Shown here: one piece after another, positions 710-61,519 of the stretch | Layout of the letters: every line of letters starts with the position of its first letter | How positions within the stretch are numbered: the stretch's first letter is position 1 | Source: Octopus bimaculoides | Lineage: Eukaryota | DNA length: 62,998 nucleotides | Assembly: GCF_001194135.2 (NCBI RefSeq) | Contig: NC_068995.1 | Coordinates: 38,390,690 to 38,453,687 of the forward strand | Direction of reading: 5' to 3' | Made by a program: the position numbers and the translations under genes | The notes under the pieces: generated by a model | Seen by the model: the letters and a program-made list of their open reading frames with translations, nothing else | Databases searched by the model: none | What the model was told of the DNA's origin: nothing

Positions 710-1750
710 AGATTTTAAAAGATAGCATTATGTTTTCAAACATCTGTAACGTAGTTACGTAATATTTCTCGTGTCAAATTCATTGAAAAGTTTGAAAAAG
801 AAAACCATTTCCTACCATGTGATAATACCAGCAAATAATGATATACGATAAGCGAATGAAAAGCACCGATACCACCAAAATATTTTAAATTTCTTTATAT
901 ATCTGTGTACATTTGAAAAATCAGGAGACAAATGTTTGCATCAATAATATGTGGTCATGCGGTGATTCTGTTAATATTATTGTATTCTTTCAAGGCAGCG
1001 AGCTAGAAAGATTCGTTCGACTGCCAGACAAGATGCTTGAGTACCAGTTGAGTACTGGGGTCGTTGTAATCGACTACACCCTCCCCCCAAATTTCGGTCC
1101 TTATGCTTTTCTTCGAATGGTATGTCGTATTCTTTTATGACCGTGAGGTGGATGAAGCGTTAGCCCGCTTGAGTAAATACTTAGCGGTATTTTGACCATC
1201 GCCAGCTTTCGTGTTGAAAATTCTGCCGATGTCGATTTCGCCTTTCATCTCTTCGGGGTTGATAATTGAGTACCAGCGAGACACTGGAGTCGTTGTAACC
1301 TCCACACCAGGCAAAGTAGTAAGCATTATTGCATTCTTTGATAAAGTGTTCAAAAAGCCTCTCCGCAGTAAGTACTTTATTGCAAAATATATATTTATAG
1401 GATTGTATAAGACTGCAGAAGAATATATTAGACTTTACAAAACGATAAAAGTCTTCATAAGAATTGTTGAAAGTGTCGTCTTTCATTTTCCATACATAAG
1501 TTGACTCTTCTACACATATTTTGAAATACTGCTTGGAGAAATAAATTCATTCTAGAGAGAGGATTTTTGAACACTTTGTATTATTCCTTTCATTATTCCT
1601 TGTTTCAGGCATGTGATTGCGACGGTGTTGGAGCACCATCGTGCGATTGTAATGCATATTAACGTCCCTGCATAGACTTTCAAATCTAGTATGTATTTTA
1701 TTCATATTGTCAAAGCGTCGTGAACAAATTGTGTAGATGGACACAAAAAC
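710..1750 (-). mobile_element. Degenerate Tc1/Tc3-like DNA transposon remnant with nested SINEs; absent from spacer copy C
   Basis: The minus strand encodes HDGAPT (~1625-1645, QDGAPxH-like motif) and FQNMCRRVNLCMENERRHFQQFL* ending at 1455 (typical RxxxCxxxxGxHFxxLL C-terminus). TIRs were not resolved. Confidence 0.5.
983..1315 (+). mobile_element. Two degenerate tRNA-type SINE copies in tandem (~983-1110 and ~1140-1315)
   Basis: Head AAGGCAGCGAGCT...; body TTTCGCCTTTCATCTCTTCGGGGTTGATAATTGAGTACCAG and GTACTGGGGTCGTTGTAATCGACT, the same family as 18903-19298. Confidence 0.75.
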
Positions 1751-10399: not shown

Positions 10400-12060
10400 T
10401 GTTCTTACCCTTACAACAGAGAACATCATAATTGTTTTTAATAGTGTATGCATTACAAAGGGAATATCCCAGGGTGATAGTCTTTCTGAAATTCTTTTCA
10501 TTTTGGCACTGAATCCATTATCGTTGCTACTGCAGAAAACAAATGGTTACATGCTAGCATCTTCAACTGCCAGAAATATCAATTCCTTTGTAGACGACCT
10601 GAAGATTTATGCTAAACGTGTTAACAATACCAAACATACAACTGGAATTAATAACATTTTCAGCTGATAAAGGCATGGAATTTAGTCAAAAGAAATGCTC
10701 ATATTTGGTTATAGAACGAAGTAAGCCAGTCCCCCAAACCAAAAAACTGTGCATCAAAGATCTCTCTATCTCCCCACTTCCACACAAAGACTGTCATAAT
10801 TACCTTGGGATACACCAAAATGTATTATATGAAGTAACTGCGAATAAAGATAGAGTGAACAGAGAATATTACACCAAACATAGGAAAATGTGGCATTCGG
10901 AACAATATCCCACAATGCATTTGCAGTACCAGTGCTGATCCCAACATTTAGGATATTTGATTGATCTGTAGAGGAAATTCACTCCATAGATATCATAACC
11001 TGCAAAATCCTGACAAGAACTGGAAACTTCCACAGAAACAGTGTTTTTGACAGGGTCTACCTAAGAAGAAATGTAGTTGGTAGAAGTATGAAAGCTGTGC
11101 AGACGGCTAAATAACAGCAGCAAAAACAAATACATAAATGCAGAGCTGAATGTGAAGTGATCAACATTGTACGAACTGGCAGTGAATTCCTCAAGAAACA
11201 CTCTCTTCCTGATGATCTCCTTTAGAGTCCCAAAACAGTTGGGTTCTCTTACCTCAGACAGACCTGGATATAAAGCACTCAGCATACACATAAAAAGGAC
11301 CATGCATGTCTATGCTTCTGGGAAGATTATTGAAGACAGTAGAATTGACACGAAGCGCAGCCTCTATTGGACACAAGACCACTACATCACATCACAATTT
11401 GAAGGCTATGCGCTTTCAATCCAGGCACAGGAGATTGCTACAAAGTATATGATGAACAAGAGAGACAGTGACACTCTTGTAGTCCCGGGGTACGATCGCA
11501 TGTGTAAGCTATGGCATGGTTTTGTGGAAGACATGGTGCATATGATTAGTAGCTCTCCTAAAATCTCTTCACGGTACTACCTCCCTATGCGGAACGATAC
11601 ATTCATAAACAGCAACTCAAGGAATACTGGTGAAATATTCCCATCGAAACTTCTGTTATATGTACTCATAAAAGGCCGGATATTGGCGTTTTGGGCAAAG
11701 GTATGTATCATCATAGAGGTTAGCTTCACTGCAGATATAAACATCTCTTTGAAAATCAAAGAAAAAGAGAATATCTATGGTCAACTGCTTCGAAACCTCC
11801 AGACTATGAATTCATATTCATACCAATAATAATTGGAACACTAGATTTTAATGGAGAATCTGGATATACTGGGATTTTCAGAAAGAGAATCACACCGTTA
11901 ACTTCGTACATTATATGTGATTTGAACCGTAAAAATATGGAAGACTTTTCTGAAGTTCCAAATGTGAATTTGTCTGTATTAACTACATTCCCAAAGAGCC
12001 TTGTATCTTTGTTGGAAACTGGCTCTCACCTCAGTGGAAGACTTATAATAATTAAAAAAC
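10400..12060 (+). mobile_element. 5'-truncated, degenerate R4/Dong-clade non-LTR retrotransposon (RT plus RLE), family B
   Basis: KGISQGDSLSEILFILALNPLS, FVDDLKIYAK, FSADKGMEFSQKKC, NYLGI, FEGYALSIQAQEIATK, CCHC-like region, IIIEVSFTADINISLKIKEKENIYGQL; many stops and frameshifts. Confidence 0.9.
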
Positions 12061-13464
12061 GAGAGAAACATACATACATACTTACATACATACATACATA
12101 CATGCGCACACACACAAACACACACGCACACACACACATACACACACATATATATTGTGTGTGTTATGACGAGAGTTGTACAGTCGGGTTTAAGTATATT
12201 ATTACCAATTAAATATTTAGATATGTCTATCTAGAATTCCCTTTCGAAGAATTAATATGTTCACACAGAACGTACTCCGTACCACTCTAAACGTATTTAC
12301 GATATTAAACTAGCAGAGTAAACAATAGGGACGATCAACGCTGTCAAATATACCCTTGTCAACTCCTTGTCAACTACTCACAGTACACACAGCTTCTTTT
12401 AATTTATTGAAAGGCGTCAGTCCTCTTTCAGTTACATGGTTGTGGTCAGGGCCTTGCCACAACAGTATATATATATATATATATATATATATATNNNNNN
12501 NNNNNNNNNNNNNNNNNNNNNNNNNNNNNNNNNNNNNNNNNNNNNNNNNNNNNNNNNNNNNNNNNNNNNNNNNNNNNNNNNNNNNNNNNNNNNNNNNNNN
12601 NNNNNNNNNNNNNNNNNNNNNNNNNNNNNNNNNNNNNNNNNNNNNNNNNNNNNNNNNNNNNNNNNNNNNNNNNNNNNNNNNNNNNNNNNNNNNNNNNNNN
12701 NNNNNNNNNNNNNNNNNNNNNNNNNNNNNNNNNNNNNNNNNNNNNNNNNNNNNNNNNNNNNNNNNNNNNNNNNNNNNNNNNNNNNNNNNNNNNNNNNNNN
12801 NNNNNNNNNNNNNNNNNNNNNNNNNNNNNNNNNNNNNNNNNNNNNNNNNNNNNNNNNNNNNNNNNNNNNNNNNNNNNNNNNNNNNNNNNNNNNNNNNNNN
12901 NNNNNNNNNNNNNNNNNNNNNNNNNNNNNNNNNNNNNNNNNNNNNNNNNNNNNNNNNNNNNNNNNNNNNNNNNNNNNNNNNNNNNNNNNNNNNNNNNNNN
13001 NNNNNNNNNNNNNNNNNNNNNNNNNNNNNNNNNNNNNNNNNNNNNNNNNNNNNNNNNNNNNNNNNNNNNNNNNNNNNNNNNNNNNNNNNNNNNNNNNNNN
13101 NNNNNNNNNNNNNNNNNNNNNNNNNNNNNNNNNNNNNNNNNNNNNNNNNNNNNNNNNNNNNNNNNNNNNNNNNNNNNNNNNNNNNNNNNNNNNNNNNNNN
13201 NNNNNNNNNNNNNNNNNNNNNNNNNNNNNNNNNNNNNNNNNNNNNNNNNNNNNNNNNNNNNNNNNNNNNNNNNNNNNNNNNNNNNNNNNNNNNNNNNNNN
13301 NNNNNNNNNNNNNNNNNNNNNNNNNNNNNNNNNNNNNNNNNNNNNNNNNNNNNNNNNNNNNNNNNNNNNNNNNNNNNNNNNNNNNNNNNNNNNNNNNNNN
13401 NNNNNNNNNNNNNNNNNNNNNNNNNNNNNNNNNNNNNNNNNNNNNNNNNNTATATATATATACA

Positions 13465-13924: not shown

Positions 13925-15437
13925 AAATGAGGAAAACTAGTTAAGCGTAGCAACATCACACTAGATAAAGCCAATGAAATAAGAGAACTAGACGAAAGCC
14001 AGCCATACAAATATTTAGGAGTCGATTAACTAGATAGGATACAACACACACAAATGAAAGAAAAAATAAAGAAAGAGTAATATAGACGAGTTAGATCAAT
14101 ACTAAAAACAGAGTTCACTGCTAAAAACAAGATAATAGGTATCAGCACTTTAGCCGTCCCAGTTATAAGTTACAGCTAAATTATCCTTAACTGGACACTA
14201 AACGAACTATCTAAAGTAGACAGGAAAACAAGAAAAATAATGACAGTATCTAGGATGCACCACCGAAACTCTGACATAGAAAGGCTATATATACAACGCA
14301 CAGAAGGTGTTAGGGGTCTTATACAGCTGGAAAACTATTATAAAATAACCATCATAGGACTGCAAACATATCTACTTCAGATGCAAGGAAAACTAATACA
14401 AATAGTCACAAAACACGAGCAAAACAAAAAATAAAAACTGTTTTCAGTATTTAAGGAAGCTGACAAATACAAACATACTACCTAACAAATACGAAGAAGA
14501 AGAAGAAGAAGAAGAAGAAGAAGAAGAAGAAAAAGAAGAAGAAGAAGAAGAAGAAGAAGAAGAAGAAGAAGAAGAAGAAGAAGAAGAAGAAGAAGAAGAA
14601 GAAGAAGAAGAAGAAGAAGAAGAAGAAGAAATAAAATCCATAAAACAAATGAAATCCAAACTAAAACTAGAACAGCAATGGACCATGTTAAAACGATGGC
14701 AAGAAAAGCCCCTACATGGTAAATACTGGGCTAAACTAAACGTAAAAGAAATAGACAGAGAAAAACCCCAGCAATGGTTGAGAAGCTCAGGACTCAAAGC
14801 AAAGACTGAAAGTTTTTTAATTGCTGCACAAGACCAAAGCCTCCCCACCAGAAATTACCAAAAAATATATAATGAAAAGAAACATAACAAGTAACTGCAG
14901 AATATGTGGCGATGGACAAGAAACAGTAAATCATATTATCTCTGGCTGCCCAGTCCTGGCTAAGAAGGAATATATTCACAGACACGACAGAACTGGGACC
15001 TATATACACTGGAAGCTATGCCAACACTATGGAATGACAACAGGAAAAANNNNNNNNNNNNNNNNNNNNNNNNNNNNNNNNNNNNNNNNNNNNNNNNNNN
15101 NNNNNNNNNNNNNNNNNNNNNNNNNNNNNNNNNNNNNNNNNNNNNNNNNNNNNNNNNNNNNNNNNNNNNNNNNNNNNNNNNNNNNNNNNNNNNNNNNNNN
15201 NNNNNNNNNNNNNNNNNNNNNNNNNNNNNNNNNNNNNNNNNNNNNNNNNNNNNNNNNNNNNNNTATATATATAACATACAGAAAATTGTACTACTGGGCA
15301 CTGCACACATCCTACGCAAAACACTTTCAATACAGTAACCATAAAAGCATCACAGCAAACCACAACACATACCCAAGGCACACAGAGCTGCGCTCGGTAG
15401 TGAAGTGAAAGCACGTTATAAAAATAAAACTACTGAA
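13925..15437 (+). mobile_element. 5'-truncated R4/Dong-clade LINE, family A, with 3' UTR, followed by (AAC)n(AAT)n at 15438-15495
   Basis: YKYLGV, LAVPVISYS, DRKTRKIMT...HHRNSDIERLYIQRTEGVRGL, WQEKPLHGKY, ESFLIAAQDQSLPTRNY, CRICGDGQETVNHIISGCPVLAKKEYIHRHD, QKIVLLGTAHILRKTLS. Confidence 0.95.
14493..14630 (+). repeat. (GAA)46 expansion (one AAA interruption) inside the R4 ORF
   Basis: Seen directly; reads as poly-Glu in frame with the downstream IKSIKQMKSKL. Confidence 0.95.
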
Positions 15438-15496: not shown

Positions 15497-15665
15497 CCTT
15501 CCAAATCTTGGTGCAGTCGACAAGTCGATTTCTGTTTTTGACTTTTACTTAATTTTTCGGCCCCGAAAGGATGAATAGGGAATTCGATTCCGGCGAAATT
15601 TGAACTCAGAACGGAAAGATAAATGAAATCCTGCTAAACATTTTACCTGGCGTGCTAACGATTAA
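15497..15665 (-). mobile_element. tRNA-type SINE, degenerate
   Basis: Reverse complement contains GTTAGCACGCCAGG...GTTCTGAGTTCAAATTTCGCCGG...TTCATCCTTTCGGGG. Confidence 0.8.

Positions 15666-17570: not shown

Positions 17571-17650
<80 letters not shown>
17571..17650. repeat. (TA)n microsatellite
   Basis: Seen directly. Confidence 0.97.
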
Positions 17651-17655
<5 letters not shown>

Positions 17656-17659
17656 TATA

Positions 17660-18540
17660 TATTATTTTGCACTCTAAATGCACGCAACGTATCAGTGAAT
17701 CCCATATTAAAGTCGAACATTACAATAACCAAAACCGTCTATCAGTGTAATCGAATACATAGTTAAGACGCTAAAGATAAACTCATGATAAAACATGTCG
17801 TTCAATATGAATTGTTCAGTAGTCAATGGTGAGCAACAAGAGTAATTATTGCTCTTGTATTAGCAAAACGGGACTGGACAATTTCGTTGTGTCTATTCAA
17901 TTCAACCGTTGGGGAAAACTATCACTTAACTGTCACAAATGATATATTATATATAAGAAAATTACAGACGGTGTATTGTATTGGAAGTAAAACGTTTGAT
18001 GTCTAATAAATACAAACAGCTTAGCGGGCATGTGTATTGCATAACATGATTTTAATTTAGAATGACGTTAATTTGTGTGTTCGAACTTCAAAAGACATCA
18101 CATGTAGGTGCATAAAACATATGCATAGATAAGCATAATTTGAGAGAGAATAGATACAATCACGAAGAAAAGCAAAAATGGAAGACAGTAAAAAGAGAGT
18201 GAAAGAGAGAGAGAAGGTAAAAGAACAGAAACAAACAGACAGACAGACAGAAAAGCCCGACAGAGGGAGACAGACGAAGAGAGACCGTGATGAACAAATG
18301 AAGATAGATAGATAAATAGGAAGAAGCAGATAGATAGGTAGAGAGAGAGAGAGGGGATGAGTCGAAAGAAATACGCTCTATTTAAAGGCGTTACAGTATA
18401 GAAGTTAACACTTTGTACAACATTACTACGCGCATCTGAAAATCATAAACAATGCCTTATACATTTCAATAAAATCTATACTGCTACACCGATCTAGAGG
18501 TCGCACGATATTCGAAAACATACATGATGCGGCATGAACT
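17660..18540 (+). repeat. Upstream/promoter block of CR copy 2
   Basis: Paralogous to 3620-4615. Confidence 0.85.
18372..18440 (+). promoter_or_regulatory. Putative core promoter of CR copy 2 (TATTTAAA at 18379-18386)
   Basis: Conserved with 4455-4520. Confidence 0.4.
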
Positions 18541-18771
18541 TCCTTCTGTCCGCATTTCAAAAACATAGAACATCATTAGAAAGACAAGCTACCTTGGACT
18601 GTTTTAATTTAAACTTTCTTTTATTAATTTCTAGAGAAATTATTATATACACCGCCTATACGTCTCTTAAACAGTCTGTGTTATAATGTTATTAAGAGTA
18701 CCAGTGAATCAATCCTGCATGCTTCAAATATATTGAAGAAATATTCAGAAGGACGGAATATACGTGGAGAC

Positions 18772-18889
18772 GTTTAGTGCCATATCACGTTGGAAGCACC
18801 GGTTCTCGCCCGATCACCGAAGTTAAGCAGCGACGATCGTAGTTAGGACTTCGATGGGTGACCGCTTGGAAAACCTAGGTGCTGTAAAC
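18772..18889 (+). pseudogene. Full-length 5S rRNA-derived copy (retroposed; head of a chimeric element)
   Basis: GTTTAGTGCCATATCACGTTGGAAGCACCGGTTCTCGCCCGATCACCGAAGTTAAGCAGC...GATGGGTGACCGC...GGTGCTGTAAAC. 118 nt, recognisable metazoan 5S with box A and box C; no T4 terminator follows. Confidence 0.9.
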
Positions 18890-19298
18890 GCCTTTCAATC
18901 CTTAATGCGATGACCTGGCAGAGACGTTAGCACGCCTGGCGAAATGCTTCCCGGTATTTCGTCTGTCACTGCGTTCTGAGTTCAAATTCCGCCGAGGTCG
19001 ACTTTGCCTTTCATCCTTTCGGGGTCGATAAATTAAGTACCAGTTACGCACTGGGGTCGATATAATCGACTTAATCCGTTTGTCTGTCCTTGTTTGTCCC
19101 CTCTGTGTGTAGCCCCTTGTGAGCAGTAAAGAAATAGGTATTTCGTCTGTCTTCATGTACTGAGTTCAAATTCCACCGAGGTTGACTTTGCCTTTCATCA
19201 TATTGGAGTCGATAAATTAAATATCAGTTGCGTAATGGGGACGATCTAATTGACTGGCCCCTTCCCCAAATTTTGGGCATTGTTCCTAGAGTAGAAAA
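18772..19298 (+). mobile_element. Chimeric 5S rRNA plus dimeric tRNA-type SINE retroposon with 17-bp target-site duplication
   Basis: Exact direct repeat GAATATACGTGGAGACG at 18756-18772 and 19299-19315. The SINE part (~18903-19298) contains two copies of the TGAGTTCAAATTCC(G/A)CCGAGGT(C/T)GACTTTGCCTTTCATC body. Confidence 0.88.
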
Positions 19299-19367
19299 GA
19301 ATATACGTGGAGACGATTGACATCCCAGGAAAGAATTAAACGGACTATTTCCATATAATCATTCACC

Positions 19368-22206: not shown

Positions 22207-24065
22207 GCGAGAGATAGATAGAGAGAGAGAGAGAAAGCATTGCGTGAACGACAGTGCCGGATGAAAGGTAGTGTTTCTTTTTGACTCCGCGTGTTGTGCT
22301 TGAAACGTGTTTATATTATTGAATGTGATAAAGTGTAGAATTATACTATTATCCTGCTTCCAGCTTCAATGTTGCTACAAGGATTTGATAAATAGGGCAG
22401 CCACCCCTTATTTGGTGATTTAGTGGGTTTTTTTGAAAAACAAGGGGGACTTTGCGGTGAGGTTCAGTGAACAAATTTAACACGTTACCCGACAGTGGCT
22501 ATAACACGAACCGATCAAGTTTATGTATAAATTTTCTTTTTATGTCAGTTTCATTTTACACACTATTAAAACAACGACTAAAGAGTTTCTGAATCAGCAC
22601 CATAACTAATTTTATCTACGAGTTGCCACTGTGTAATAGCGAAGATCACTATCAGTTCAAATCCGTTCAAATATTTCTCATATCATATTCACTTCAGCAT
22701 ATTTTGTCAGCTCTGCAATATAAATAAAGATGCCCACAACTCATAATCATGAATAATTAATAGTTTCAAATTATGGCAAAAGACCAGCAGATTTCAAAGG
22801 AGGGGAAAGTGGATTACTTCGATTCCAGTGCTTAACTGGTGCTTTTTTATCGACCTCAAAATTATGAATGCCACAGATTACCTTGACTTAGAGCGTACAG
22901 CTAGAAGAAATACCAATGCTCATTTTGTGCGACATACGAACGATCCTGGCACCCTACTGACCTATTATTTTACAAAAATAATATTTCTTATTTCCACGTA
23001 GAGGTGTCACATAGATATTTCATAAATGACCTTTCTTAAAATTTTCTTGTGATTTTTATGTTATTTTTACTTTTAGATGTGGATCAAGTATTACTCAAAT
23101 GCATCTACAATATTATTACATTTGTTTATAATCACTTGTTTATAACCACTTGCAATGTGACATAGATTCATTTATACAAATTATTTACAAAATGTCTTCT
23201 TAAACACAGGTCTATAACTAAATCTAATCGTATTATTTAATGATAACATTACAAAAGTGTGTGCTTTTAATTCTATGTAACTAATAAAATGCATTATGGC
23301 GGCCTTAAATATATTTATAAAGACCTTGAAAGCTTCAATTTAAATTATTAATACCCTACATGCAAAACTTACACTGGCGTCTTGAGATACAGCGGTCTAC
23401 TTTAGAAAATGTTAATCCTTATAGACAAGCACCATACTGACATTGTATAAGATGACTGTCTATTTTTGAGTAAAAATATTTTATCCTATTCCAAGAGAAA
23501 TCTGTGCTGCACCGAAAAACTGATTCTGATATGCTGCTGACATTCTTCAAAAATGTTAATTTTCAGACAATTATCACTAATACAACTGTTGCCAAATACT
23601 ATGCAACCTTTGATGTATTTGTTTAGTATATCTTATTATTGTTTCGATACATTTTATCTTTGTGATTTTCTCTAATTTTTACATTTGCACCTGGTGAATT
23701 TCGTTCTTTAGGCTTATTATATCGAAGTACATAATGCATTTTGTTTTTCTTTCCCTCATGTTCACCTCTGAAAAGACATTTTGCACAAGGATTATACTTT
23801 ACTTATTTTATAATATTTATTTATGTTGCATTTCTATTCATCACTGGGTAATTCTGCTTTATTTTTGCTATATTTAAACATTAACGCTATCTGTATGGGT
23901 ACATATATGGTACTTAAAATTATATAAGCATATACATTTTTGCATCTAGGCATGCATTTGCATACATATGTATGAATATATAATTTATTTATTTATTTAG
24001 GCGCTTAAGCGTGTATACATACTCTTGTAAGTGAAACCGTAACCGTTTCTATGTGTCGGTGTATG
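21740..24065. repeat. Spacer block X copy C, interrupted by a hAT-type MITE
   Basis: Matches 140-700 and 1750-2690. Confidence 0.85.
21870..22631. mobile_element. Non-autonomous hAT-type element (MITE), 762 bp
   Basis: Imperfect TIRs CAGTGGCGGCTTGTGTATA and, on the reverse complement, CAGTGGCAACTCGTAGATA; degenerate 8-bp TSD AGCAATAG/TGTAATAG; absent from spacer copies A and B. Confidence 0.75.
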
Positions 24066-25442
24066 TATATAAATATCTATGTGTATATACATGAAAACAT
24101 ATGGATATAAAATTTTGCTATACTAAATTATATTTCAAACTTAACATACACGCCGTTTCGTTTATCCACCGGATTTCGTCTGTCAGAGTGAAAATATTGA
24201 GGAATATATACAGTTTCCCTTTTTCTGGTTATATGTATTTTTTATATACACATTTGAACATATTGAACCACTTTTTTATTCTGTGTATATTCTTTTGAAT
24301 GTAGTAAATCCATACACACAGACACCACACACGCACACTCACATACTTATGCACGTATACATACACATAAGCATATATTCATGCATGCATACACATATAC
24401 ATCTACACACAGACACACACATATATATATATGCATATATATNNNNNNNNNNNNNNNNNNNNNNNNNNNNNNNNNNNNNNNNNNNNNNNNNNNNNNNNNN
24501 NNNNNNNNNNNNNNNNNNNNNNNNNNNNNNNNNNNNNNNNNNNNNNNNNNNNNNNNNNNNNNNNNNNNNNNNNNNNNNNNNNNNNNNNNNNNNNNNNNNN
24601 NNNNNNNNNNNNNNNNNNNNNNNNNNNNNNNNNNNNNNNNNNNNNNNNNNNNNNNNNNNNNNNNNNNNNNNNNNNNNNNNNNNNNNNNNNNNNNNNNNNN
24701 NNNNNNNNNNNNNNNNNNNNNNNNNNNNNNNNNNNNNNNNNNNNNNNNNNNNNNNNNNNNNNNNNNNNNNNNNNNNNNNNNNNNNNNNNNNNNNNNNNNN
24801 NNNNNNNNNNNNNNNNNNNNNNNNNNNNNNNNNNNNNNNNNNNNNNNNNNNNNNNNNNNNNNNNNNNNNNNNNNNNNNNNNNNNNNNNNNNNNNNNNNNN
24901 NNNNNNNNNNNNNNNNNNNNNNNNNNNNNNNNNNNNNNNNNNNNNNNNNNNNNNNNNNNNNNNNNNNNNNNNNNNNNNNNNNNNNNNNNNNNNNNNNNNN
25001 NNNNNNNNNNNNNNNNNNNNNNNNNNNNNNNNNNNNNNNNNNNNNNNNNNNNNNNNNNNNNNNNNNNNNNNNNNNNNNNNNNNNNNNNNNNNNNNNNNNN
25101 NNNNNNNNNNNNNNNNNNNNNNNNNNNNNNNNNNNNNNNNNNNNNNNNNNNNNNNNNNNNNNNNNNNNNNNNNNNNNNNNNNNNNNNNNNNNNNNNNNNN
25201 NNNNNNNNNNNNNNNNNNNNNNNNNNNNNNNNNNNNNNNNNNNNNNNNNNNNNNNNNNNNNNNNNNNNNNNNNNNNNNNNNNNNNNNNNNNNNNNNNNNN
25301 NNNNNNNNNNNNNNNNNNNNNNNNNNNNNNNNNNNNNNNNNNNNNNNNNNNNNNNNNNNNNNNNNNNNNNNNNNNNNNNNNNNNNNNNNNNNNNNNNNNN
25401 NNNNNNNNNNNNNNNNNNNNNNNNNNNNNNNNNNNNNNNNNC

Positions 25443-26700: not shown

Positions 26701-27171
26701 CGGTTTGACAACAACTCGTTGTAATGATAAATACCTAGAATCTTCAGCTAATTTATTATTCTGAATGTTCAAAACTTCCCAACGAATGGTTACGTGAAAC
26801 GGCGTGGAAAAATTTATGGAATTCATACAGTTTCAATAANNNNNNNNNNNNNNNNNNNNNNNNNNNNNNNNNNNNNNNNNNNNNNNNNNNNNNNNNNNNN
26901 NNNNNNNNNNNNNNNNNNNNNNNNNNNNNNNNNNNNNNNNNNNNNNNNNNNNNNNNNNNNNNNNNNNNNNNNNNNNNNNNNNNNNNNNNNNNNNNNNNNN
27001 NNNNNNNNNNNNNNNNNNNNNNNNNNNNNNNNNNNNNNNNNNNNNNNNNNNNNNNNNNNNNNNNNNNNNNNNNNNNNNNNNNNNNNNNNNNNNNNNNNNN
27101 NNNNNNNNNNNNNNNNNTGTGTGTGTGTGTTGTGTGTTGTGCTGTGTGTGTGTGTGTGTGCGTGTGTGAGT

Positions 27172-28556: not shown

Positions 28557-28705
28557 CCTTTCAACTATAGGCTCAAGGACTGAAATTTTGCTGGGGGGTA
28601 GGTGGATAGTCGATTACTTCGACCCCAGTACGTAACTGGTACTTATTTCATTGAGCCCAGAAAGTTGGCGGCGAAATGTCCTTAAGCATTTTGTGCGGCG
28701 TGGTA
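28557..28705 (-). mobile_element. tRNA-type SINE, degenerate
   Basis: AGTCGATTACTTCGACCCCAGTACGTAACTGGTACTTAT is the reverse complement of the SINE body. Confidence 0.75.
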
Positions 28706-28744
28706 AATAAATGCTTTGCCTTCATTTCCGGTTTTTTTTTTCAG

Positions 28745-28945
28745 AATGTGGAAATTATTAGCACGTTGGACCAAATGCTTAGTGTCATTACATCCACATT
28801 TACGGTCTGATTTCAAATCCCCCGCGGTTGAATTTGTCTTCCATCCTTTCGGAATTGATAAATTAAGTGCCAGTGAAACACTGGGGTCGATGTAATCGAC
28901 TTAATGCTCTTCCCCAATCTGCCCTTGTGGCAAACGTTTGAGATG
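28745..28945 (+). mobile_element. tRNA-type SINE, degenerate
   Basis: TTAGCACG...AAATGCTTAG...TTCCATCCTTTCGG...CACTGGGGTCGATGTAATCGACTT. Confidence 0.8.
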
Positions 28946-30327: not shown

Positions 30328-33097
30328 ACAACAGCGCTTTTGAGATACATCCCAAATTGATTGATTCATTTTATTTTTATGTATAAAAATTTATGTTCAT
30401 TTTCCTTTCTTGAAGTTGTTTGAACAATGATATTTGAAAATTCATCTTAAGATGGTTATACTTCCAAAGGAATTGCAAATCAATATTTTTTCTTTTTTGA
30501 TATCTTTTTTGATATCTTTTTTTTCTTTTTTGATACGCATAAACACATTGCGTAAGTCTGATCGTGCTTATGTATCTTGTGTGGGCGCTTATAATTTTTT
30601 GAGTGTGTATACATTTACAATTTTATTTACCTTCTTTCCTACCATACCCTCTAAAAATAGACGTTGTTTACTTCTTTTATGGTCTTGTTTGTTCATGTCG
30701 CCAGTAATACCATGCAAAACATATGACTGTTGTAAAATAATAACTATTTACTTAATTCCCAGTATCTATATGATTGATAATTTTCACTTCTTATTGAATA
30801 TGTCTCATATTCATGCATACATTCTGTGTCAAATTGATAGATTTGGTAATGTGCATTGATCTATTCCTCAACATGTAAGCCATGAAATCCTGAAGGAAGA
30901 TTTCATTTTGACATTGTTCCCAAAAATTTTATTTTGACAAGAACAAGGAAATCAATTTGAGACGATATTGCCATCTGCTATAACCAGTATAATTAGACGA
31001 AAGAACCGAGTTTCGCAGTTAATAGTGTGATATGAAATCTACTTGTCATTTATACTAGGCATTATAGCTTTTTAACGCCGGATGTCATGAAGTATCGACA
31101 AGTAAATTTGAATATTGGAGTGTTTGAACAAGTAGTCAGGTTATTCCCTATTCTATTACCATTGTAAATATCTCTGATTATATTATATTAATATGATGTA
31201 AATGTCCCGTGACTTAACGGCGTTATACATATATTTGTACATCTTTTATCTCCATTATTTAATTAAAAAAGGAGAGTCGAGTGTTTATTTAGTTCCTAAA
31301 TGCTTAATTGACCATGCAGTTTTATTTCAAGTTACGTTGCATTGATAATTTCCAAAAGTGAATGAAATAAATATAAATTTATCTGAATCTACTTGCAAAA
31401 AGCCCAAAGGAAAAAAAAAAGGAATAAGAATGAATTAAATAATAAAAAAATGAAATAAGAATATATAAAAAAAAATCTCTTTCAGGGATTCTGTCCGCTC
31501 GAGGGAAATTTCTCCCTCACTTTTATTTCTTAGCAAAGCCTACTTTTCTCTTTGACTCTTACACTAAACACATTCGCAAGAAGACATCAGCGGTCGCCAC
31601 CAGTCAAATTTCACACGTATACATACATACATACATACATTTATGCATACATACATACACACACACACACACATGTATATATGAGTGTGTATGCATATAT
31701 ATATATGTGCATATTTTTATGTCACTCTCTCTCTCTCTATATATATTTATATAAATATGTGTGTATNNNNNNNNNNNNNNNNNNNNNNNNNNNNNNNNNN
31801 NNNNNNNNNNNNNNNNNNNNNNNNNNNNNNNNNNNNNNNNNNNNNNNNNNNNNNNNNNNNNNNNNNNNNNNNNNNNNNNNNNNNNNNNNNNNNNNNNNNN
31901 NNNNNNNNNNNNNNNNNNNNNNNNNNNNNNNNNNNNNNNNNNNNNNNNNNNNNNNNNNNNNNNNNNNNNNNNNNNNNNNNNNNNNNNNNNNNNNNNNNNN
32001 NNNNNNNNNNNNNNNNNNNNNNNNNNNNNNNNNNNNNNNNNNNNNNNNNNNNNNNNNNNNNNNNNNNNNNNNNNNNNNNNNNNNNNNNNNNNNNNNNNNN
32101 NNNNNNNNNNNNNNNNNNNNNNNNNNNNNNNNNNNNNNNNNNNNNNNNNNNNNNNNNNNNNNNNNNNNNNNNNNNNNNNNNNNNNNNNNNNNNNNNNNNN
32201 NNNNNNNNNNNNNNNNNNNNNNNNNNNNNNNNNNNNNNNNNNNNNNNNNNNNNNNNNNNNNNNNNNNNNNNNNNNNNNNNNNNNNNNNNNNNNNNNNNNN
32301 NNNNNNNNNNNNNNNNNNNNNNNNNNNNNNNNNNNNNNNNNNNNNNNNNNNNNNNNNNNNNNNNNNNNNNNNNNNNNNNNNNNNNNNNNNNNNNNNNNNN
32401 NNNNNNNNNNNNNNNNNNNNNNNNNNNNNNNNNNNNNNNNNNNNNNNNNNNNNNNNNNNNNNNNNNNNNNNNNNNNNNNNNNNNNNNNNNNNNNNNNNNN
32501 NNNNNNNNNNNNNNNNNNNNNNNNNNNNNNNNNNNNNNNNNNNNNNNNNNNNNNNNNNNNNNNNNNNNNNNNNNNNNNNNNNNNNNNNNNNNNNNNNNNN
32601 NNNNNNNNNNNNNNNNNNNNNNNNNNNNNNNNNNNNNNNNNNNNNAGGAAGTAGAAGAATAGGTGAGCAACGAGAGGAAAAGAGGAAGAGAGGAAGTACG
32701 AGGGGGGAAAAGGAGACACGTATTAGTAACAGAGGAAGAATGAGAAGGGTAAAGAGAGATACGTAGTAGTAAACAGAGGAAGAACGAGAGGGAGAAAAAT
32801 GAAGAGGAAGCAAAAGAGAAAGAGAAAGAGATAGAGTAGCGTCGGAAAATATAAAGTTGCGAAAACTACTTACAGATTGGTGACGCTGCGTTCGGTCATG
32901 AAAAAACAAATAGTAAATAAGTATATGCATATATACGTACAGGTATGTGCATACCGACATCCACCTGTATGTATAGGTGCATATACAAACACACACACAC
33001 ACACACACACACACTCATATATGTATGCATGTATATATATATACATCCCTACATATATATATATGTATATATGTATGCATGTATATATATATACATG

Positions 33098-42876: not shown

Positions 42877-43789
42877 CGATAGCGTGAGGCATTAATACCC
42901 AGTTAATGCCCTTTATATATAATTAAATATATCTATGAAGAAACGATGATTTTTTTCATTACGAAATTTTTCGTTATTTTTTCATTATGAGGTTTTTTCA
43001 TGCTGACTACTTGATTAATTCTTATACAGAATTTATACTATATTATATTATATATNNNNNNNNNNNNNNNNNNNNNNNNNNNNNNNNNNNNNNNNNNNNN
43101 NNNNNNNNNNNNNNNNNNNNNNNNNNNNNNNNNNNNNNNNNNNNNNNNNNNNNNNNNNNNNNNNNNNNNNNNNNNNNNNNNNNNNNNNNNNNNNNNNNNN
43201 NNNNNNNNNNNNNNNNNNNNNNNNNNNNNNNNNNNNNNNNNNNNNNNNNNNNNNNNNNNNNNNNNNNNNNNNNNNNNNNNNNNNNNNNNNNNNNNNNNNN
43301 NNNNNNNNNNNNNNNNNNNNNNNNNNNNNNNNNNNNNNNNNNNNNNNNNNNNNNNNNNNNNNNNNNNNNNNNNNNNNNNNNNNNNNNNNNNNNNNNNNNN
43401 NNNNNNNNNNNNNNNNNNNNNNNNNNNNNNNNNNNNNNNNNNNNNNNNNNNNNNNNNNNNNNNNNNNNNNNNNNNNNNNNNNNNNNNNNNNNNNNNNNNG
43501 CATAAATAGTTTGAGATTTGTTTCAGTATAAAAAAAGTAACATCAAAATATGTCAGACCTCAAGGTGGGCAGTAAGGCAGGTGTTTATATTCAATTAACA
43601 TATTTATTATTTTAATTTTAAAATAAAAGTATACTTTTCTTAGGCTTAAATTATAGAAAAATGCATGAGCAATTCAGAATCATTAGTCGCCTCGAACAAA
43701 AATTAGGAGAAAATGTGTTATGAGGTAAAATGTCATAAAATAGAAAATAAGTAAGTGAGGAAGAAGTAAAATGCATGCTTACATTCTGA

Positions 43790-43870
43790 GGCGGCGAGCA
43801 GGGAGAAACGTTAGCGCGCCGGGCGAAATATTCTGCCGAGGTCGAATATATCTTTTATCCATTTCGGATC
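43790..43870 (+). mobile_element. Internally deleted tRNA-type SINE head
   Basis: AGGCGGCGAGCAGGGAGAAACGTTAGCGCGCCGGGCGAAAT...GCCGAGGTCGA. Confidence 0.75.
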
Positions 43871-46356: not shown

Positions 46357-46749
46357 NNNNNNNNNNNNNNNNNNNNNNNNNNNNNNNNNNNNNNNNNNNN
46401 NNNNNNNNNNNNNNNNNNNNNNNNNNNNNNNNNNNNNNNNNNNNNNNNNNNNNNNNNNNNNNNNNNNNNNNNNNNNNNNNNNNNNNNNNNNNNNNNNNNN
46501 NNNNNNNNNNNNNNNNNNNNNNNNNNNNNNNNNNNNNNNNNNNNNNNNNNNNNNNNNNNNNNNNNNNNNNNNNNNNNNNNNNNNNNNNNNNNNNNNNNNN
46601 NNNNNNNNNNNNNNNNNTATATATATAAATGTATGTATGTATGTATATATTATTTTATCTGGGAAGGGTCTTTGCCTCTGTATACAGTTTTTACCTCTCT
46701 ATTCCAGTTTTTGCCTGTGTATCTAGGGCAGGCATGACTGGTTTTATTA

Positions 46750-50188: not shown

Positions 50189-51743
50189 TTTTAACATATT
50201 TTATCATTAAATTACCAAGTATATACCTATTTTCTAACATCTAGGTTTATAAAAAAGGATCTGGGTTTCTTCCACATATTTCATGAGTGGCAACCGTAAT
50301 TCTAACTAGAGTATTTATGTCATCTTCATACCTACATAAAGCAAAACAGTAGTGGATTGTTCAGCTAAAGGTTGTTTAAGTTTTCTGTCCCACCAGGTCA
50401 TAAACAGACCAGCCACATCCCCAGCCACAACGACTCCAATGGCTGCACCTTGAATTGCTAAACTTTACTATGCGATTCCTCAAGGTTCTTATGCTAGCTC
50501 CTATTGCAAGTACAATCATTCTTTCCACCTGATTGTTGTTCTCGGGATACTGCATAGGTAAGGTCCAGCCACTCCAGTACTCTGAGATGCTTTTCTTCAC
50601 TGCCGTTGTGATAGTGAGTGGTGTTTCCCTCTGTGGGGCAGAATCAGCTAAGGTCATGACTGTCTATAGAGATAGATAGATAGATAGATACATACATGCA
50701 TGTACATATACACGCACACACATGCATACAGACATACATATACGCACACATACGTCCGTAAACAAATGTACTCCGACAAACAATCACACATACAACAGAG
50801 ATAGGGGTATTTAAATTTGCATATGTATCATATGTATATGCGGCTTAAGTATGTTTATGTCACTCAACACAGTTGTGCGTGTACACAGCTATATTCCTGT
50901 ATATATGTAAATGAACAAGTCTATATGTCTATCTATCTCTATCTATCTCTCTCTCCCCCCCTCTCTCTCTCTCTCTATCTCTATCTATATTTATACTATA
51001 TACTTGCCTGTATGGTCTGGCTAAGTCAAAATGTTTTTTTGTATTCATCCTTCCTACTTGGAGAGTTTAAAAGTACTTACAAATATATGTCCTTTTGTTG
51101 AAATGAAATTTCAGTAAATTTCTATATCTTTGTACAGCTGAGGATTGCTCTGCATTTTACGTTTGATGCAATGTTCACAATGCTTAAATGAATGGAGCCG
51201 CATGAAACGATTTTACAGCATTAACTTTGGATATCCTTGTNNNNNNNNNNNNNNNNNNNNNNNNNNNNNNNNNNNNNNNNNNNNNNNNNNNNNNNNNNNN
51301 NNNNNNNNNNNNNNNNNNNNNNNNNNNNNNNNNNNNNNNNNNNNNNNNNNNNNNNNNNNNNNNNNNNNNNNNNNNNNNNNNNNNNNNNNNNNNNNNNNNN
51401 NNNNNNNNNNNNNNNNNNNNNNNNNNNNNNNNNNNNNNNNNNNNNNNNNNNNNNNNNNNNNNNNNNNNNNNNNNNNNNNNNNNNNNNNNNNNNNNNNNNN
51501 NNNNNNNNNNNNNNNNNNNNNNNNNNNNNNNNNNNNNNNNNNNNNNNNNNNNNNNNNNNNNNNNNNNNNNNNNNNNNNNNNNNNNNNNNNNNNNNNNNNN
51601 NNNNNNNNNNNNNNNNNNNNNNNNNNNNNNNNNNNNNNNNNNNNNNNNNNNNNNNNNNNNNNNNNNNNNNNNNNNNNNNNNNNNNNNNNNNNNNNNNNNN
51701 NNNNNNNNNNNNNNNNNNNNNNNNNNNNNNNNNNNNNNNNNNN

Positions 51744-54782: not shown

Positions 54783-55543
54783 AATAATAATAATAATAAT
54801 AAAATGATCAGTTAGGGTAGAGTATGATAGAAAAGGAATAAAGACAGCTTAATCACTAAAACCATAATAAAATATCCATACCTTATTAACTTCAATAGCA
54901 AATATTTATAGAAAGTGTATATTTTAAGTAAAACAATATGTCATTATTGTATAAAGTTAAAATTTGGGGTTATCAGGAAGATTTATCATTTAGGAGAGAG
55001 ACAAACTTTACTACAAATTAGTTTAATTAATCTAAGTAGTTTAATTTTAAGTTATGAAGATAGTCATATTGTTTTTTATAAGCTAAGTATACATTTATTG
55101 AGGTACAAAAATTTAGGTTTGTCTAAAGGCAATACTCCTTTATTAATACTCCTTTATTAATACCAGGATATACCAATTAATCAACATTCACAGATACCAT
55201 CTGATGGGTTAGTATTTAAGTGTACAGTACGTATAAATATTCAACTATTTCTTTCTGGATAATTTCTCTTCCTCCCTTTATTGTGCAAATGTTTGGTATA
55301 TACTCAAAAGTATTCATAAATGTCTATCCTTTTGTTAAAATATTCTTCTTAATAATCCTCTGAATAGCCCTAAACTTTAACTGTATACAATATAGTATCA
55401 TTGTTTAAAACATTTAACTATAATACTACATGATAAGACCTCCCCTGTTTCATTATCAATGGTCTGCTAGTGGGCGACCCCCTTAGTTGTCAGCTAACAT
55501 CTTATTTGACGTTTTCCCTTAACAAACATCATGATATTGTTTC
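53176..55543. repeat. Unclassified complex repeat: ~1-kb degenerate tandem units plus a ~380-bp inverted copy
   Basis: Inverted arms 53176-53554 / 55147-55543; direct diverged copy 54300-54560; internal tandem duplications of 42 bp (53657-53740) and ~115 bp (53930-54135). Confidence 0.85.
54718..54801. repeat. (ATG)n(ATA)n microsatellite
   Basis: Seen directly. Confidence 0.95.
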
Positions 55544-55619
55544 GACCTCGGTGGAATTTGAACTCTGACGGTAGCGACGGGTGAAATACCGCTAAGCATA
55601 GCGTCTCTTAGTTCGGATA

Positions 55620-57594: not shown

Positions 57595-57810
57595 AAGCGG
57601 AGAGCTGGCAAACTGGATAACGCGTAGGTATAGTGCTTAGCGGCATTTCTTCCGACATTAAGTTCTGAGTTCAAATACCGCCGGAGTCGACTTTAACTTT
57701 CATCCATTCGAGTGTCAATAAAATACGTACCGCATGAACACTGGTCAATATAATCAACTTACCCCTTCTCTGAAATAGTTGACCTCATACCAAAAGTTGA
57801 AACCTATATT
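57595..57810 (+). mobile_element. tRNA-type SINE, degenerate; further minus-strand fragments at 55544-55600 and 59345-59460
   Basis: AAAGCGGAGAGCTGGCA...GCTTAGCGGCATTTC...GTTCTGAGTTCAAATACCGCCGGAGTCGACTTT. Confidence 0.8.

Positions 57811-61474: not shown

Positions 61475-61519
<45 letters not shown>

What the first reader, a model, noticed from the sequence alone, without database searches (positions are those of the whole stretch)
18756..19315. 5S rRNA-SINE chimera retroposed as one unit (17-bp TSD): candidate 5S-headed (SINE3-like) family in a cephalopod
Seen: a complete 118-nt 5S copy starts exactly at the left TSD and lacks the TTTT Pol III terminator (GCCTTTC follows). It runs after ~14 nt into a dimeric tRNA-type SINE, and the whole 527 bp is flanked by an exact GAATATACGTGGAGACG repeat. 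Established: TSDs of this length result from LINE-mediated target-primed reverse transcription, and 5S-headed SINEs (SINE3) are a known but uncommon class. Inference: either a Pol III read-through or template-switch one-off, or a member of an amplified 5S-tRNA composite SINE family. I do not know whether it has been catalogued.
Basis: partly seen in the sequence, partly recalled or inferred. Interest (0 to 1): 0.75.

Follow-up and report, generated by a model that had tools for sequence, protein, structure and literature searches.

The report
One-off 5S rRNA–SINE chimeric retrocopy
A copy of a variant 5S ribosomal RNA and a copy of the genome's most abundant short repeat (SINE) were pasted into this spot together in one reverse-transcription event; the join occurs only once in the genome, so it is a single, apparently inactive chimera and not a new repeat family.

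Summary
A full-length 5S rRNA copy (18772-18890, Rfam 77.5 bits) has no T-run terminator. After a 13-15 nt trailer it runs into a complete, internally duplicated SINE (18904-19298). The whole is flanked by an exact 17-bp repeat (0 expected by chance). Neither part has its own target-site duplication, and no poly(A) lies between them, so one insertion event is the best reading.

The family reading fails. In one run's contigs (X3) only the window's own contig spans 5S end, trailer and SINE head, at single-copy depth. In four runs no contig spans the whole 5S and the SINE head. About 14-35 other copies share the 5S end plus the trailer and then continue into unrelated sequence. So the trailer belongs to a diverged 5S gene variant. 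In two such contigs it runs into a TTTT terminator exactly where the window joins the SINE.

No RNA evidence shows the locus is transcribed.

Most likely mechanism: a LINE reverse transcriptase copied a SINE RNA to its 5' end, then switched to the 3' end of a terminated variant 5S transcript. This matches the chimeric retrogenes known from mammals, and it is the step thought to found 5S-headed SINEs, but here nothing amplified. Ordinary; low interest.

The parts
18756..18772 (+). Left copy of the target-site duplication GAATATACGTGGAGACG. Its last G is also nucleotide 1 of the 5S copy.
   Evidence: Exact 17-mer found only twice in the window, 0 expected from shuffles. Flanks outside it are single copy, about 0.7 reads deep.
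18772..18890 (+). Full-length copy of a diverged 5S rRNA variant. It differs from the organism's canonical 5S at 13 fixed sites and 2 polymorphic sites out of about 118.
   Evidence: Rfam 5S_rRNA, 77.5 bits, model 1-120. Nearly all of about 900 reads per run carry other letters at 18777, 18778, 18793, 18809, 18830, 18833, 18837, 18839, 18847, 18852 and 18870. Canonical ends are GCTTACGG... and ...GCTGTAAGC.
18891..18903 (+). 3' trailer of the variant 5S transcript (G)CCTTTCAATCCTT. It ends in TT where paralogous copies have TTTT.
   Evidence: About 14-35 copy equivalents share the 5S 3' end plus this trailer, most with T at 18891. The 7 best-aligning other contigs in X3 diverge at 18897-18903. 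Two X3 contigs continue ...CCTT+TTATTTCAGAAG.
18904..18952 (+). SINE head, complete at its 5' end, with a box A-like TAGCACGCCTGG.
   Evidence: The consensus 5' end (A)AGGCGGCGAGCTGGCAGAA is preceded by varied AT-rich flanks in hundreds of contigs. Read depth climbs from about 1,900 at 18906 to about 30,000 at 18923.
18953..19071 (+). SINE core, first copy, with a box B-like GAGTTCAAATTCC.
   Evidence: Up to about 160,000 reads deep. Matches degenerate SINE copies elsewhere in the window. In ordinary monomers 19071 joins about 19264.
19072..19136 (+). Extra SINE segment ...GTAAAGAAATAGG, which in many other copies is followed by a new SINE head.
   Evidence: 19136 is followed by AGAAACGTTAGCAC in about 7,800 reads per run, and a 'goes back 217' joint has about 450 reads.
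19137..19255 (+). SINE core, second copy, 83% identical to the first.
   Evidence: Self-alignment. The same 19136->18953 join is seen in about 70-95 reads per run, so this duplicated form recurs.
19256..19298 (+). SINE 3' tail GGCCCCTTCCCCAAATTTTGGGCATTGTTCCTAGAGTAGAAAA.
   Evidence: Matches the family tail consensus in loose ends. Another copy in the window ends ...CCTATAGTTGAAAGGA, so the terminal A-run is the SINE's own.
19299..19315 (+). Right copy of the target-site duplication.
   Evidence: Read depth falls to single copy directly after it.

Best explanation
This is a single chimeric retrocopy made in one target-primed reverse transcription event. Inferred steps: a LINE-encoded endonuclease and reverse transcriptase nicked the target at ...GGACG/GAATATA.... 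It primed on the 3' tail of an RNA of the abundant SINE, in its internally duplicated form, and copied that RNA to its very 5' end. Instead of stopping it switched template to the 3' end of a terminated Pol III transcript of a diverged 5S gene variant (5S plus a 13-15 nt trailer ending in UU). It copied that RNA to nucleotide 1. Second-strand cleavage 17 bp away then produced the duplication. Shown: the anatomy, the single duplication, the uniqueness of the junction, and the link between the trailer and 5S variants elsewhere in the genome. Inferred: the template switch itself and the identity of the enzyme. The product looks inactive from the start: it has one copy and no locus-specific RNA.
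For: One exact 17-bp duplication encloses the 5S and the SINE. No direct repeat flanks either part alone. Both parts lie in the same orientation. The 5S is complete to nucleotide 1. The SINE is complete to its consensus 5' end, AAGGCGG. The A-run at its 3' end is the SINE's own tail, so no leftover poly(A) lies between or after the parts. The junction is single copy: in X3 contigs only the window's own 88-nt contig spans 18858-18937, at depth 58 against about 50 for the flanking contig. The next best alignments end at 18897-18903 and have 25 to 2,429 further unaligned letters. At 90% or more likeness, raw-read depth falls towards 1.5-4.75 per run at 18902-18905. The trailer is shared with about 14-35 other 5S-variant copies. 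In two contigs it continues as CCTT+TTATTT, which places a T4 terminator exactly at the window's junction. The 5S part differs from canonical 5S by 11-13%, and the SINE differs from its consensus by about 6-7%. Yet the two duplication copies are 17/17 identical. This fits a young insertion whose 5S template was already diverged. Literature: chimeric insertions of 5S rRNA and other small RNAs fused 5' of a LINE or SINE 3' part, flanked by one duplication, are known and attributed to template switching (10.1101/2025.02.02.635956; Buzdin 2003 as cited in PMC4758252).
Against: Template switching leaves no unique scar, so it is inferred by excluding rivals. The terminator-at-junction point rests on the 30-nt consensus of only two contigs. 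A source locus less than 80% alike, collapsed or unassembled would have been missed. Paralog sequences could not be read directly, only summarised. In human 5S/L1 chimeras the 5S is often truncated and antisense (10.1101/2025.02.02.635956), unlike here. The target site and tail are not L1-like, and the responsible LINE is unidentified.
Confidence: 0.62

Rival explanations
1. Read-through, or 5' transduction, from a source locus. A SINE had inserted into the T-run terminator of a variant 5S gene. Pol III starting at the 5S promoter then read through into the SINE, and this chimeric transcript was retroposed here through the SINE tail.
For: The 5S in the window lacks a T4 terminator. No T4 run occurs until 19271-19274, so a Pol III transcript could cover almost all of it. 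The junction lies exactly where paralogs have TTTT, an AT-rich spot of the kind the SINE's flanks suggest it prefers.
Against: The model needs a second genomic copy of the junction. None is seen at 80% or more likeness in X3 contigs, and no contig spanning the whole 5S and the SINE head appears in X1, X3, X6 or X11. The own-locus junction contig has single-copy depth.
Confidence: 0.15
2. Two nested insertions. First a 5S-variant retropseudogene created the 17-bp duplication. Later a SINE landed at the 3' end of that retrocopy.
For: 5S retrocopies followed by poly(A) exist in this genome (loose ends ACAAAAAAAAAAAG and TTAAAAAAAAGG), and A-tails are favoured LINE targets. The 5S part is about twice as far from its canonical sequence as the SINE is from its consensus.
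Against: No duplication flanks the SINE alone. The AA before it and the AAAA after it are the SINE's own ends. So there is no poly(A) remnant, and the SINE would have had to insert with no duplication exactly between the trailer and the old duplication. The excess divergence of the 5S is explained by a variant source, since other copies share the trailer.
Confidence: 0.1
3. A member of an amplified 5S-headed composite SINE family (SINE3, AmnSINE1 or HaSE3-like).
For: The architecture, a 5S head upstream of a SINE, matches AmnSINE1 and HaSE3 (PMC4758252, PMC3272025). About 18-25 reads per run cover 18890-18901 where about 0.7 is expected for a unique site. One loose-end class hints at another 5S-to-SINE-head join (12 reads, agreement 0.53).
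Against: The excess reads stop at 18897-18903 and continue into unrelated sequence. Only the window's own contig spans into the SINE head, at single-copy depth. None of the other SINE copies in the window has a 5S. The 15 indexed RNA runs hold none of the region's words, and raw RNA-seq shows no locus-specific reads. SINEBase requires at least 100 copies (PMC3531059).
Confidence: 0.05
4. An assembly artefact, or a DNA-level juxtaposition of a 5S fragment and a SINE.
For: The window is a draft scaffold with many N gaps, and repeats are prone to misjoins.
Against: Independent read sets reproduce the left flank-5S join and the 5S-SINE join with 0 differences. The junction's words are complete in 5 samples from 3 studies. 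An exact 17-bp duplication at the precise ends of two RNA-derived units is the signature of retroposition, not of a misjoin.
Confidence: 0.03

Closest known systems
Chimeric retrogenes / chimeric LINE-mediated insertions (U6, U3, 5S rRNA and others fused 5' of an L1, Alu or mRNA 3' part; Buzdin et al. 2003 as cited in PMC4758252; census in bioRxiv 10.1101/2025.02.02.635956)
   Same: Two unrelated RNAs are copied head-to-tail in one orientation. A small Pol III RNA sits on the 5' side. The element that carries the reverse-transcriptase-recognised 3' end sits on the 3' side. One duplication (7-25 bp) surrounds the whole. Each junction is a unique event that does not propagate.
   Different: The 3' partner is a non-poly(A) SINE of an invertebrate, not L1 or Alu. 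The target (GGACG/GAATATA) and the tail (GTAGAAAA) are not L1-like, so another, unidentified LINE did it. The 5S is full length and sense, whereas human 5S/L1 chimeras are often truncated and antisense. The 5S template was a diverged variant carrying a 3' trailer.
[quoted passage not shown]
   Same: The same architecture, a 5S sequence fused to the 5' end of a pre-existing SINE, and the same proposed origin: template switching from SINE RNA to 5S rRNA during cDNA synthesis.
   Different: Those are amplified families whose 5S promoter took over. Here there is one copy and no sign of transcription. The SINE head is still complete behind the 5S.
SINE3 / 5S rRNA-derived SINEs (Kapitonov and Jurka 2003, as cited in PMC3272025 and PMC3531059)
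   Same: A 5S-derived 5' module followed by a SINE body and tail, with a target-site duplication.
   Different: The copy-number criterion fails (1 against at least 100). The 5S part is a whole 5S plus trailer, not a trimmed promoter module.
5S rRNA retropseudogenes
   Same: A reverse-transcribed copy of a 5S transcript that is complete at its 5' end. Dispersed 5S-like copies, some with poly(A), are common in this genome.
   Different: Here the 5S has no tail of its own and shares its duplication with a SINE.

Membership tests
5S rRNA-derived SINE family (SINE3 class; SINEBase definition, PMC3531059) | Head at least 60% identical to 5S rRNA over at least 60 nt | tested here: met
   Rfam 5S_rRNA 77.5 bits over model 1-120. 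About 87-89% identical to the organism's canonical 5S as reconstructed from reads.
5S rRNA-derived SINE family (SINE3 class; SINEBase definition, PMC3531059) | Interspersed repeat of at least 100 copies with the same module composition, that is, the same head-body junction | tested here: not met
   Only the window's own contig spans 18858-18937, at single-copy depth. Other copies stop at 18897-18903. No contig spanning the whole 5S and the SINE head appears in 4 runs.
5S rRNA-derived SINE family (SINE3 class; SINEBase definition, PMC3531059) | Transcribed by Pol III from the 5S-type internal promoter | tested here: inconclusive
   15 indexed RNA runs hold 0.00 of the words. Three raw RNA-seq runs show 0 depth in the flanks and only canonical-type 5S reads. 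These are ordinary cDNA libraries, not small-RNA or Pol III assays.
5S rRNA-derived SINE family (SINE3 class; SINEBase definition, PMC3531059) | Target-site duplication and a 3' tail used by a partner LINE | tested here: inconclusive
   The 17-bp duplication is present and the tail is the abundant SINE's own. The partner LINE was not identified.
AmnSINE1 / HaSE3-type 5S + tRNA-SINE chimeric SINE | 5S sequence fused upstream of a pre-existing SINE in the same orientation | tested here: met
   5S at 18772-18890, then the trailer, then the SINE from 18904.
AmnSINE1 / HaSE3-type 5S + tRNA-SINE chimeric SINE | The chimera itself became a master copy and amplified | tested here: not met
   single-copy junction, found only in organism A.
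Chimeric retrocopy by template switching (Buzdin type) | One target-site duplication around the whole, none around either part, and no poly(A) between the parts | tested here: met
Chimeric retrocopy by template switching (Buzdin type) | The 5' part is a small cellular RNA copied to its 5' end; the 3' part carries the 3' end used for priming | tested here: met
   The 5S starts at model position 1, right at the duplication. The SINE tail abuts the right duplication copy.
Chimeric retrocopy by template switching (Buzdin type) | The junction is a unique event and is not propagated | tested here: met
   X3 contigs; raw reads at 90% or more likeness fall to about 1.5-4.75 per run at 18902-18905.
Chimeric retrocopy by template switching (Buzdin type) | Made by L1 ORF2p: TT/AAAA target and poly(A) tail | tested here: not met
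   The target is GGACG/GAATATA and the tail is GTAGAAAA, which is part of the SINE. It works like the L1 case, but a different LINE must be responsible.
Functional 5S rRNA gene | Canonical sequence, T-run terminator, and membership of the repeated 5S gene set | tested here: not met
   13-15 differences from the majority sequence, two broken pairs in helix I, no T4 run, and unique flanks.
tRNA-derived SINE (the 3' partner) | Head recognisably derived from a tRNA | tested here: inconclusive
   No tRNA found by ARAGORN in the window copy or in a read-derived consensus, and no Rfam tRNA match in the window copy at E<=10. Box A-like and box B-like motifs are seen by eye only. Octopus SINEs are reported as tRNA-derived (Ohshima and Okada 1994, cited in PMC4758252), but identity with those families was not tested.

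The most novel reading that the evidence does not exclude
The locus may be a snapshot of the founding step of 5S-headed SINE families such as AmnSINE1 and HaSE3. The LINE that drives this genome's huge SINE family may make such 5S::SINE chimeras recurrently. One loose-end class of 12 reads shows a 5S 3' end joined through a different spacer to a SINE head. If so, some of these chimeras could form low-copy lineages that were missed because paralog sequences could not be read directly.
Probability: 0.12. Interest if true: 0.5.

Novelty: new member of a known kind. Interest (0 to 1): 0.25.

Why it matters
Taken alone it matters little: it is one inactive chimeric retrocopy. It is a clean invertebrate, non-L1 example of small-RNA/SINE chimera formation. 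It preserves the intermediate that the template-switch model proposes for the birth of 5S-headed SINEs: full 5S, trailer and full SINE head. It also shows that a diverged 5S gene variant with a longer 3' trailer is, or was, expressed and available to the retrotransposition machinery. A genome-wide census of such chimeras could measure how often this LINE's reverse transcriptase switches templates.

Tried and rejected
1. Family reading. At first about 20 reads per run over 18890-18901 looked like a family of about 28 copies. Contig pieces showed these copies stop at 18897-18903 and are not followed by the SINE, so I rejected it.
2. Compensatory changes. Several apparent compensatory changes in the 5S helices came from comparing with a generic 5S recalled from memory. 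Against the organism's own canonical sequence only one pair (2/117, C-G to U-A) is compensated and two pairs are broken, so there is no case for selection on structure.
3. Empty-site test. Contigs of organisms B-E have flanks about 85% alike, but the output did not show whether the site is empty or filled. Inconclusive.
4. Joints table on 18800-19045, meant to find 5S joined to other SINE positions. It was swamped by SINE-internal joints and showed nothing usable.
5. The 8-nt repeat GAGACGTT at 18767 and 18921 as a possible duplication of a 5S-only insertion. Rejected: the inserted piece would have to contain the SINE's own first 15 nt, and the match depends on a private G at 18923.
6. The palindrome AGGTTCGTCCATCGATCGATGGACGAACCT in loose ends. 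It follows many unrelated positions in runs X21-X23, so I read it as a library linker, not genomic sequence.
7. A protein-database search with a peptide translated across the junction. No open frame of 30 aa or more spans the junction, so I did not run it.
8. tRNA detection in the SINE head. Negative.
9. Pfam on four ORFs of the window. Only a weak zf-RVT hit, unrelated to the finding.

Full report
**What is in the sequence**

Rfam finds exactly one RNA family in the 63-kb window. It is a complete 5S rRNA at 18772-18890 on the + strand: 77.5 bits against a gathering score of 38, model positions 1-120, not truncated.

The 17-mer GAATATACGTGGAGACG occurs exactly twice, at 18756-18772 and 19299-19315. 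Dinucleotide-preserving shuffles gave no match even with two mismatches allowed. The last G of the left copy is also nucleotide 1 of the 5S.

After the 5S comes GCCTTTCAATCCTTAA with no T4 run. From about 18904 the sequence is a very abundant repeat.

**How the reads were used**

Public reads of the same species, coded organism A, were sampled to about 0.7-fold genome coverage.
- The flanks are 0-3 reads deep.
- The 5S part is about 900-1,000 reads deep.
- The repeat reaches about 160,000 reads deep.

**The SINE**

In hundreds of contigs the repeat's consensus 5' end is (A)AGGCGGCGAGCTGGCAGAA, preceded by varied AT-rich flanks. The window copy, AATGCGATGACCTGGCAGAG from 18904, is therefore complete at its 5' end.

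Its layout is as follows.

| Segment | Coordinates |
|---|---|
| Head | 18904-18952 |
| Core, first copy | 18953-19071 |
| Extra segment | 19072-19136 |
| Core, second copy (83% identical) | 19137-19255 |
| Tail | 19256-19298 |

- Ordinary monomers join 19071 to about 19264 (hundreds of reads).
- The window's own 19136-to-18953 join recurs in about 70-95 reads per run.
- 19136 is followed by a fresh SINE head in about 7,800 reads per run.

Duplicated and tandem forms of this SINE are therefore common.

A tRNA origin could not be confirmed. ARAGORN found nothing on the window copy or on a read-derived consensus. Rfam at E<=10 gave no tRNA match on the window copy. Box A-like and box B-like motifs are visible only by eye.

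**The 5S part**

Nearly all 5S reads differ from the window at 18777, 18778, 18793, 18809, 18830, 18833, 18837, 18839, 18847, 18852 and 18870. They also differ at 18773 and 18888, and partly at 18832 and 18873.

The canonical gene reads GCTTACGGCC...GCTGTAAGC followed by ATTCTTTTTCTTTTT. The window copy is thus 11-13% away from canonical 5S. The SINE part shows about 6-7% majority differences from its consensus.

The two duplication copies are 17/17 identical. That would be unlikely if 11-13% had accumulated after insertion (inference). So the 5S template was most likely already a diverged variant.

**Is the 5S-SINE junction repeated?**

Raw reads at first suggested yes. About 18-25 reads per run cover 18890-18901 at 85% or more likeness, and about 4-9 at 90% or more. 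About 0.7 is expected for a unique site. Most of these reads carry T at 18891.

Contigs of four runs give 14-19 copy equivalents there.

I then laid one run's contigs (X3) on 18858-18937. On that stretch 5S-only or SINE-only matches cannot exceed about 32 nt.
- Only one contig spans the stretch: the window's own, with 0 differences and depth 58. The flanking unique contig has depth about 50.
- The next seven alignments end at 18897-18903.
- Their contigs run on for 25 to 2,429 further letters that do not match the SINE head.
- With the wider stretch 18772-18965, no contig in four runs spans the whole 5S and the SINE head.

The junction's words are present in five samples from three studies of organism A, and in no other organism.

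So what is repeated is the 5S 3' end plus about 10-14 nt of trailer. It is not the join to the SINE.

**What the trailer says about mechanism**

The trailer-sharing copies are heterogeneous. One collapsed class of about 10 copies reads AAAC ATCTTTCCATCC. The others are single copy.

In two X3 contigs the sequence after 18903 is TTATTTCAGAAG... (agreement 0.83). This gives ...CAATCCTTTTATTT, a T4 Pol III terminator at exactly the position where the window joins the SINE.

This fits a terminated primary transcript of a variant 5S gene, ending in ...CCUU, serving as acceptor template. It fits less well with read-through, which should have carried the sequence beyond the T-run. The point rests on two contigs and is suggestive only.

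**One event or two?**

No direct repeat of 6 nt or more flanks the 5S plus trailer alone, or the SINE alone. The one exception is an 8-mer, GAGACGTT at 18767 and 18921. It depends on a private substitution and cannot delimit a sensible insert.
- The AA before the SINE belongs to the SINE consensus.
- The terminal GTAGAAAA(GA) matches the tail of another copy in the window...GTTGAAAGGA.

So no poly(A) remnant lies on either side of the SINE. A nested insertion would need the SINE to land, with no duplication of its own, exactly between the trailer and the old duplication. I rate that at about 0.1.

**Expression**

Fifteen indexed RNA runs of organism A hold none of the words of 18772-18960. In three raw RNA-seq runs:
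- the flanks have zero depth;
- the few 5S reads carry canonical letters;
- reads over 18906 onward carry SINE-consensus letters.

Nothing indicates that the chimera is transcribed. These are ordinary cDNA libraries, though, so Pol III transcripts are poorly sampled.

**Mechanism (inferred)**

1. A LINE endonuclease and reverse transcriptase nicked at ...GGACG/GAATATA....
2. It primed on the SINE RNA tail. The tail and the target may share GA(AT) as microhomology.
3. It copied the SINE RNA to its 5' end.
4. It switched to the 3' end of the variant 5S transcript and copied that RNA to nucleotide 1.
5. Staggered second-strand cleavage gave the 16-17 bp duplication.

I give this 0.62. The rivals are:
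- read-through from a source locus that is lost or undetected, 0.15;
- nested insertions, 0.10;
- an amplified family, 0.05;
- an artefact, 0.03.

**Comparison with what is known**

It works like the chimeric retrogenes and chimeric L1 insertions of mammals. There U6, U3, 5S and other small RNAs sit 5' of a LINE, Alu or mRNA 3' part inside one duplication, and each junction is unique. In one census 5S made up 10.5% of 253 catalogued chimeras (10.1101/2025.02.02.635956). Buzdin 2003 is cited in PMC4758252.

It differs in three ways.
- The 3' partner is a non-poly(A) invertebrate SINE.
- The target and tail are not L1-like.
- The 5S is full length and sense, and derives from a variant with a trailer.

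Its architecture matches AmnSINE1 and HaSE3. Both are SINE families thought to have arisen by template switching from a tRNA-derived SINE RNA to 5S rRNA (PMC4758252, PMC3272025). It fails the defining requirement of a SINE family, at least 100 copies (PMC3531059).

The failure to amplify fits a published argument. Type 1 (5S) promoters depend on upstream signals and tend to be silent after retroposition (Kapitonov and Jurka, as discussed in PMC3272025).

**Verdict**

- Observation: confirmed.
- Retroposition as one unit: supported.
- The "candidate 5S-headed family": not supported.
- Classification: a new member of a known kind, with low interest.

**Limits**

- Paralog sequences could be seen only as summaries.
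- The orthologous site in other species could not be resolved.
- The organism's identity is coded, so "cephalopod" was not checked.

Noticed in passing
genome of organism A (reads and contigs laid on window 18772-18890): Many dispersed, single-copy 5S-like copies exist. About 40-50 contigs per run carry a 5S start preceded by different AT-rich flanks. Some 5S ends are followed by poly(A) (ACAAAAAAAAAAAGAAAA..., TTAAAAAAAAGG...), so 5S retropseudogenes are common here.
   Followed up: partly
window 18888-18903 and its paralogs: A diverged 5S variant class (about 14-35 copy equivalents, one collapsed class of about 10) ends AAAC instead of AAGC and carries the trailer (G/A)TCTTTC(A/C)ATCC. In two contigs the trailer runs into TTTTATTTCAGAAG. 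This may be a second 5S gene type with a longer 3' trailer.
   Followed up: partly
window 18890-18903 versus 19005-19017 (and 19189-19198): The trailer GCCTTTCAATCCTT resembles the SINE-internal motif GCCTTTCATCCTT (13 of 14 with one gap). Only 6 of 5,000 shuffles score as well for the window's form, and about 210 of 5,000 for the paralogs' forms. Unexplained, possibly chance in C/T-rich sequence.
   Followed up: partly
reads of X21 ending at window 18888: A loose-end class of 12 reads shows a 5S 3' end followed by AATTGGCGGTGCACTGGCAGCAACGTTAGC, that is, a SINE head joined through a different spacer (agreement 0.53). It hints at other, independent 5S::SINE chimeras. It was not seen among the top classes of X22 or X23.
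   Followed up: no
window 18920-19136: This 217-bp SINE unit occurs head-to-tail elsewhere. A 'goes back 217' joint has about 450 reads per run, and 19136 is followed by a new SINE head in about 7,800 reads per run. The SINE therefore also exists as tandem or multimeric arrays.
   Followed up: no
runs X21-X23 (not the window): The palindrome AGGTTCGTCCATCGATCGATGGACGAACCT follows many unrelated positions in these 'GENOMIC OTHER' libraries. I read it as a ligation linker of the library. It should be ignored when reading loose ends.
   Followed up: yes
window about 12430-13460, 15050-15270, 24440-25440, 26830-27110, 31770-32640, 43060-43500, 46360-46620, 51240-51740, 61220-61480: Long runs of N (assembly gaps) show that the window comes from a draft scaffold. 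Microsatellites are frequent: (GAA)46 at 14493-14630, (TA)45 at 17572-17662, and others.
   Followed up: no
window 14821-15048 (+), possibly 11167-11829 (+): An ORF fragment with a weak Pfam zf-RVT match (E 8.5e-5, below the gathering score) suggests a decayed LINE 3' region. It was not linked to the SINE tail.
   Followed up: partly
window 1037-1298, 15546-15660, 22801-22876, 28559-28905, 43801-43867, 55542-55599, 57634-57768, 59344-59433: Further old, fragmentary copies of the same SINE (74-86% identity). None has a 5S next to it.
   Followed up: yes
window 18767-18774 and 18921-18928: The 8-mer GAGACGTT is shared between the duplication/5S start and the SINE head. It depends on a private G at 18923 and is judged chance.
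   Followed up: yes
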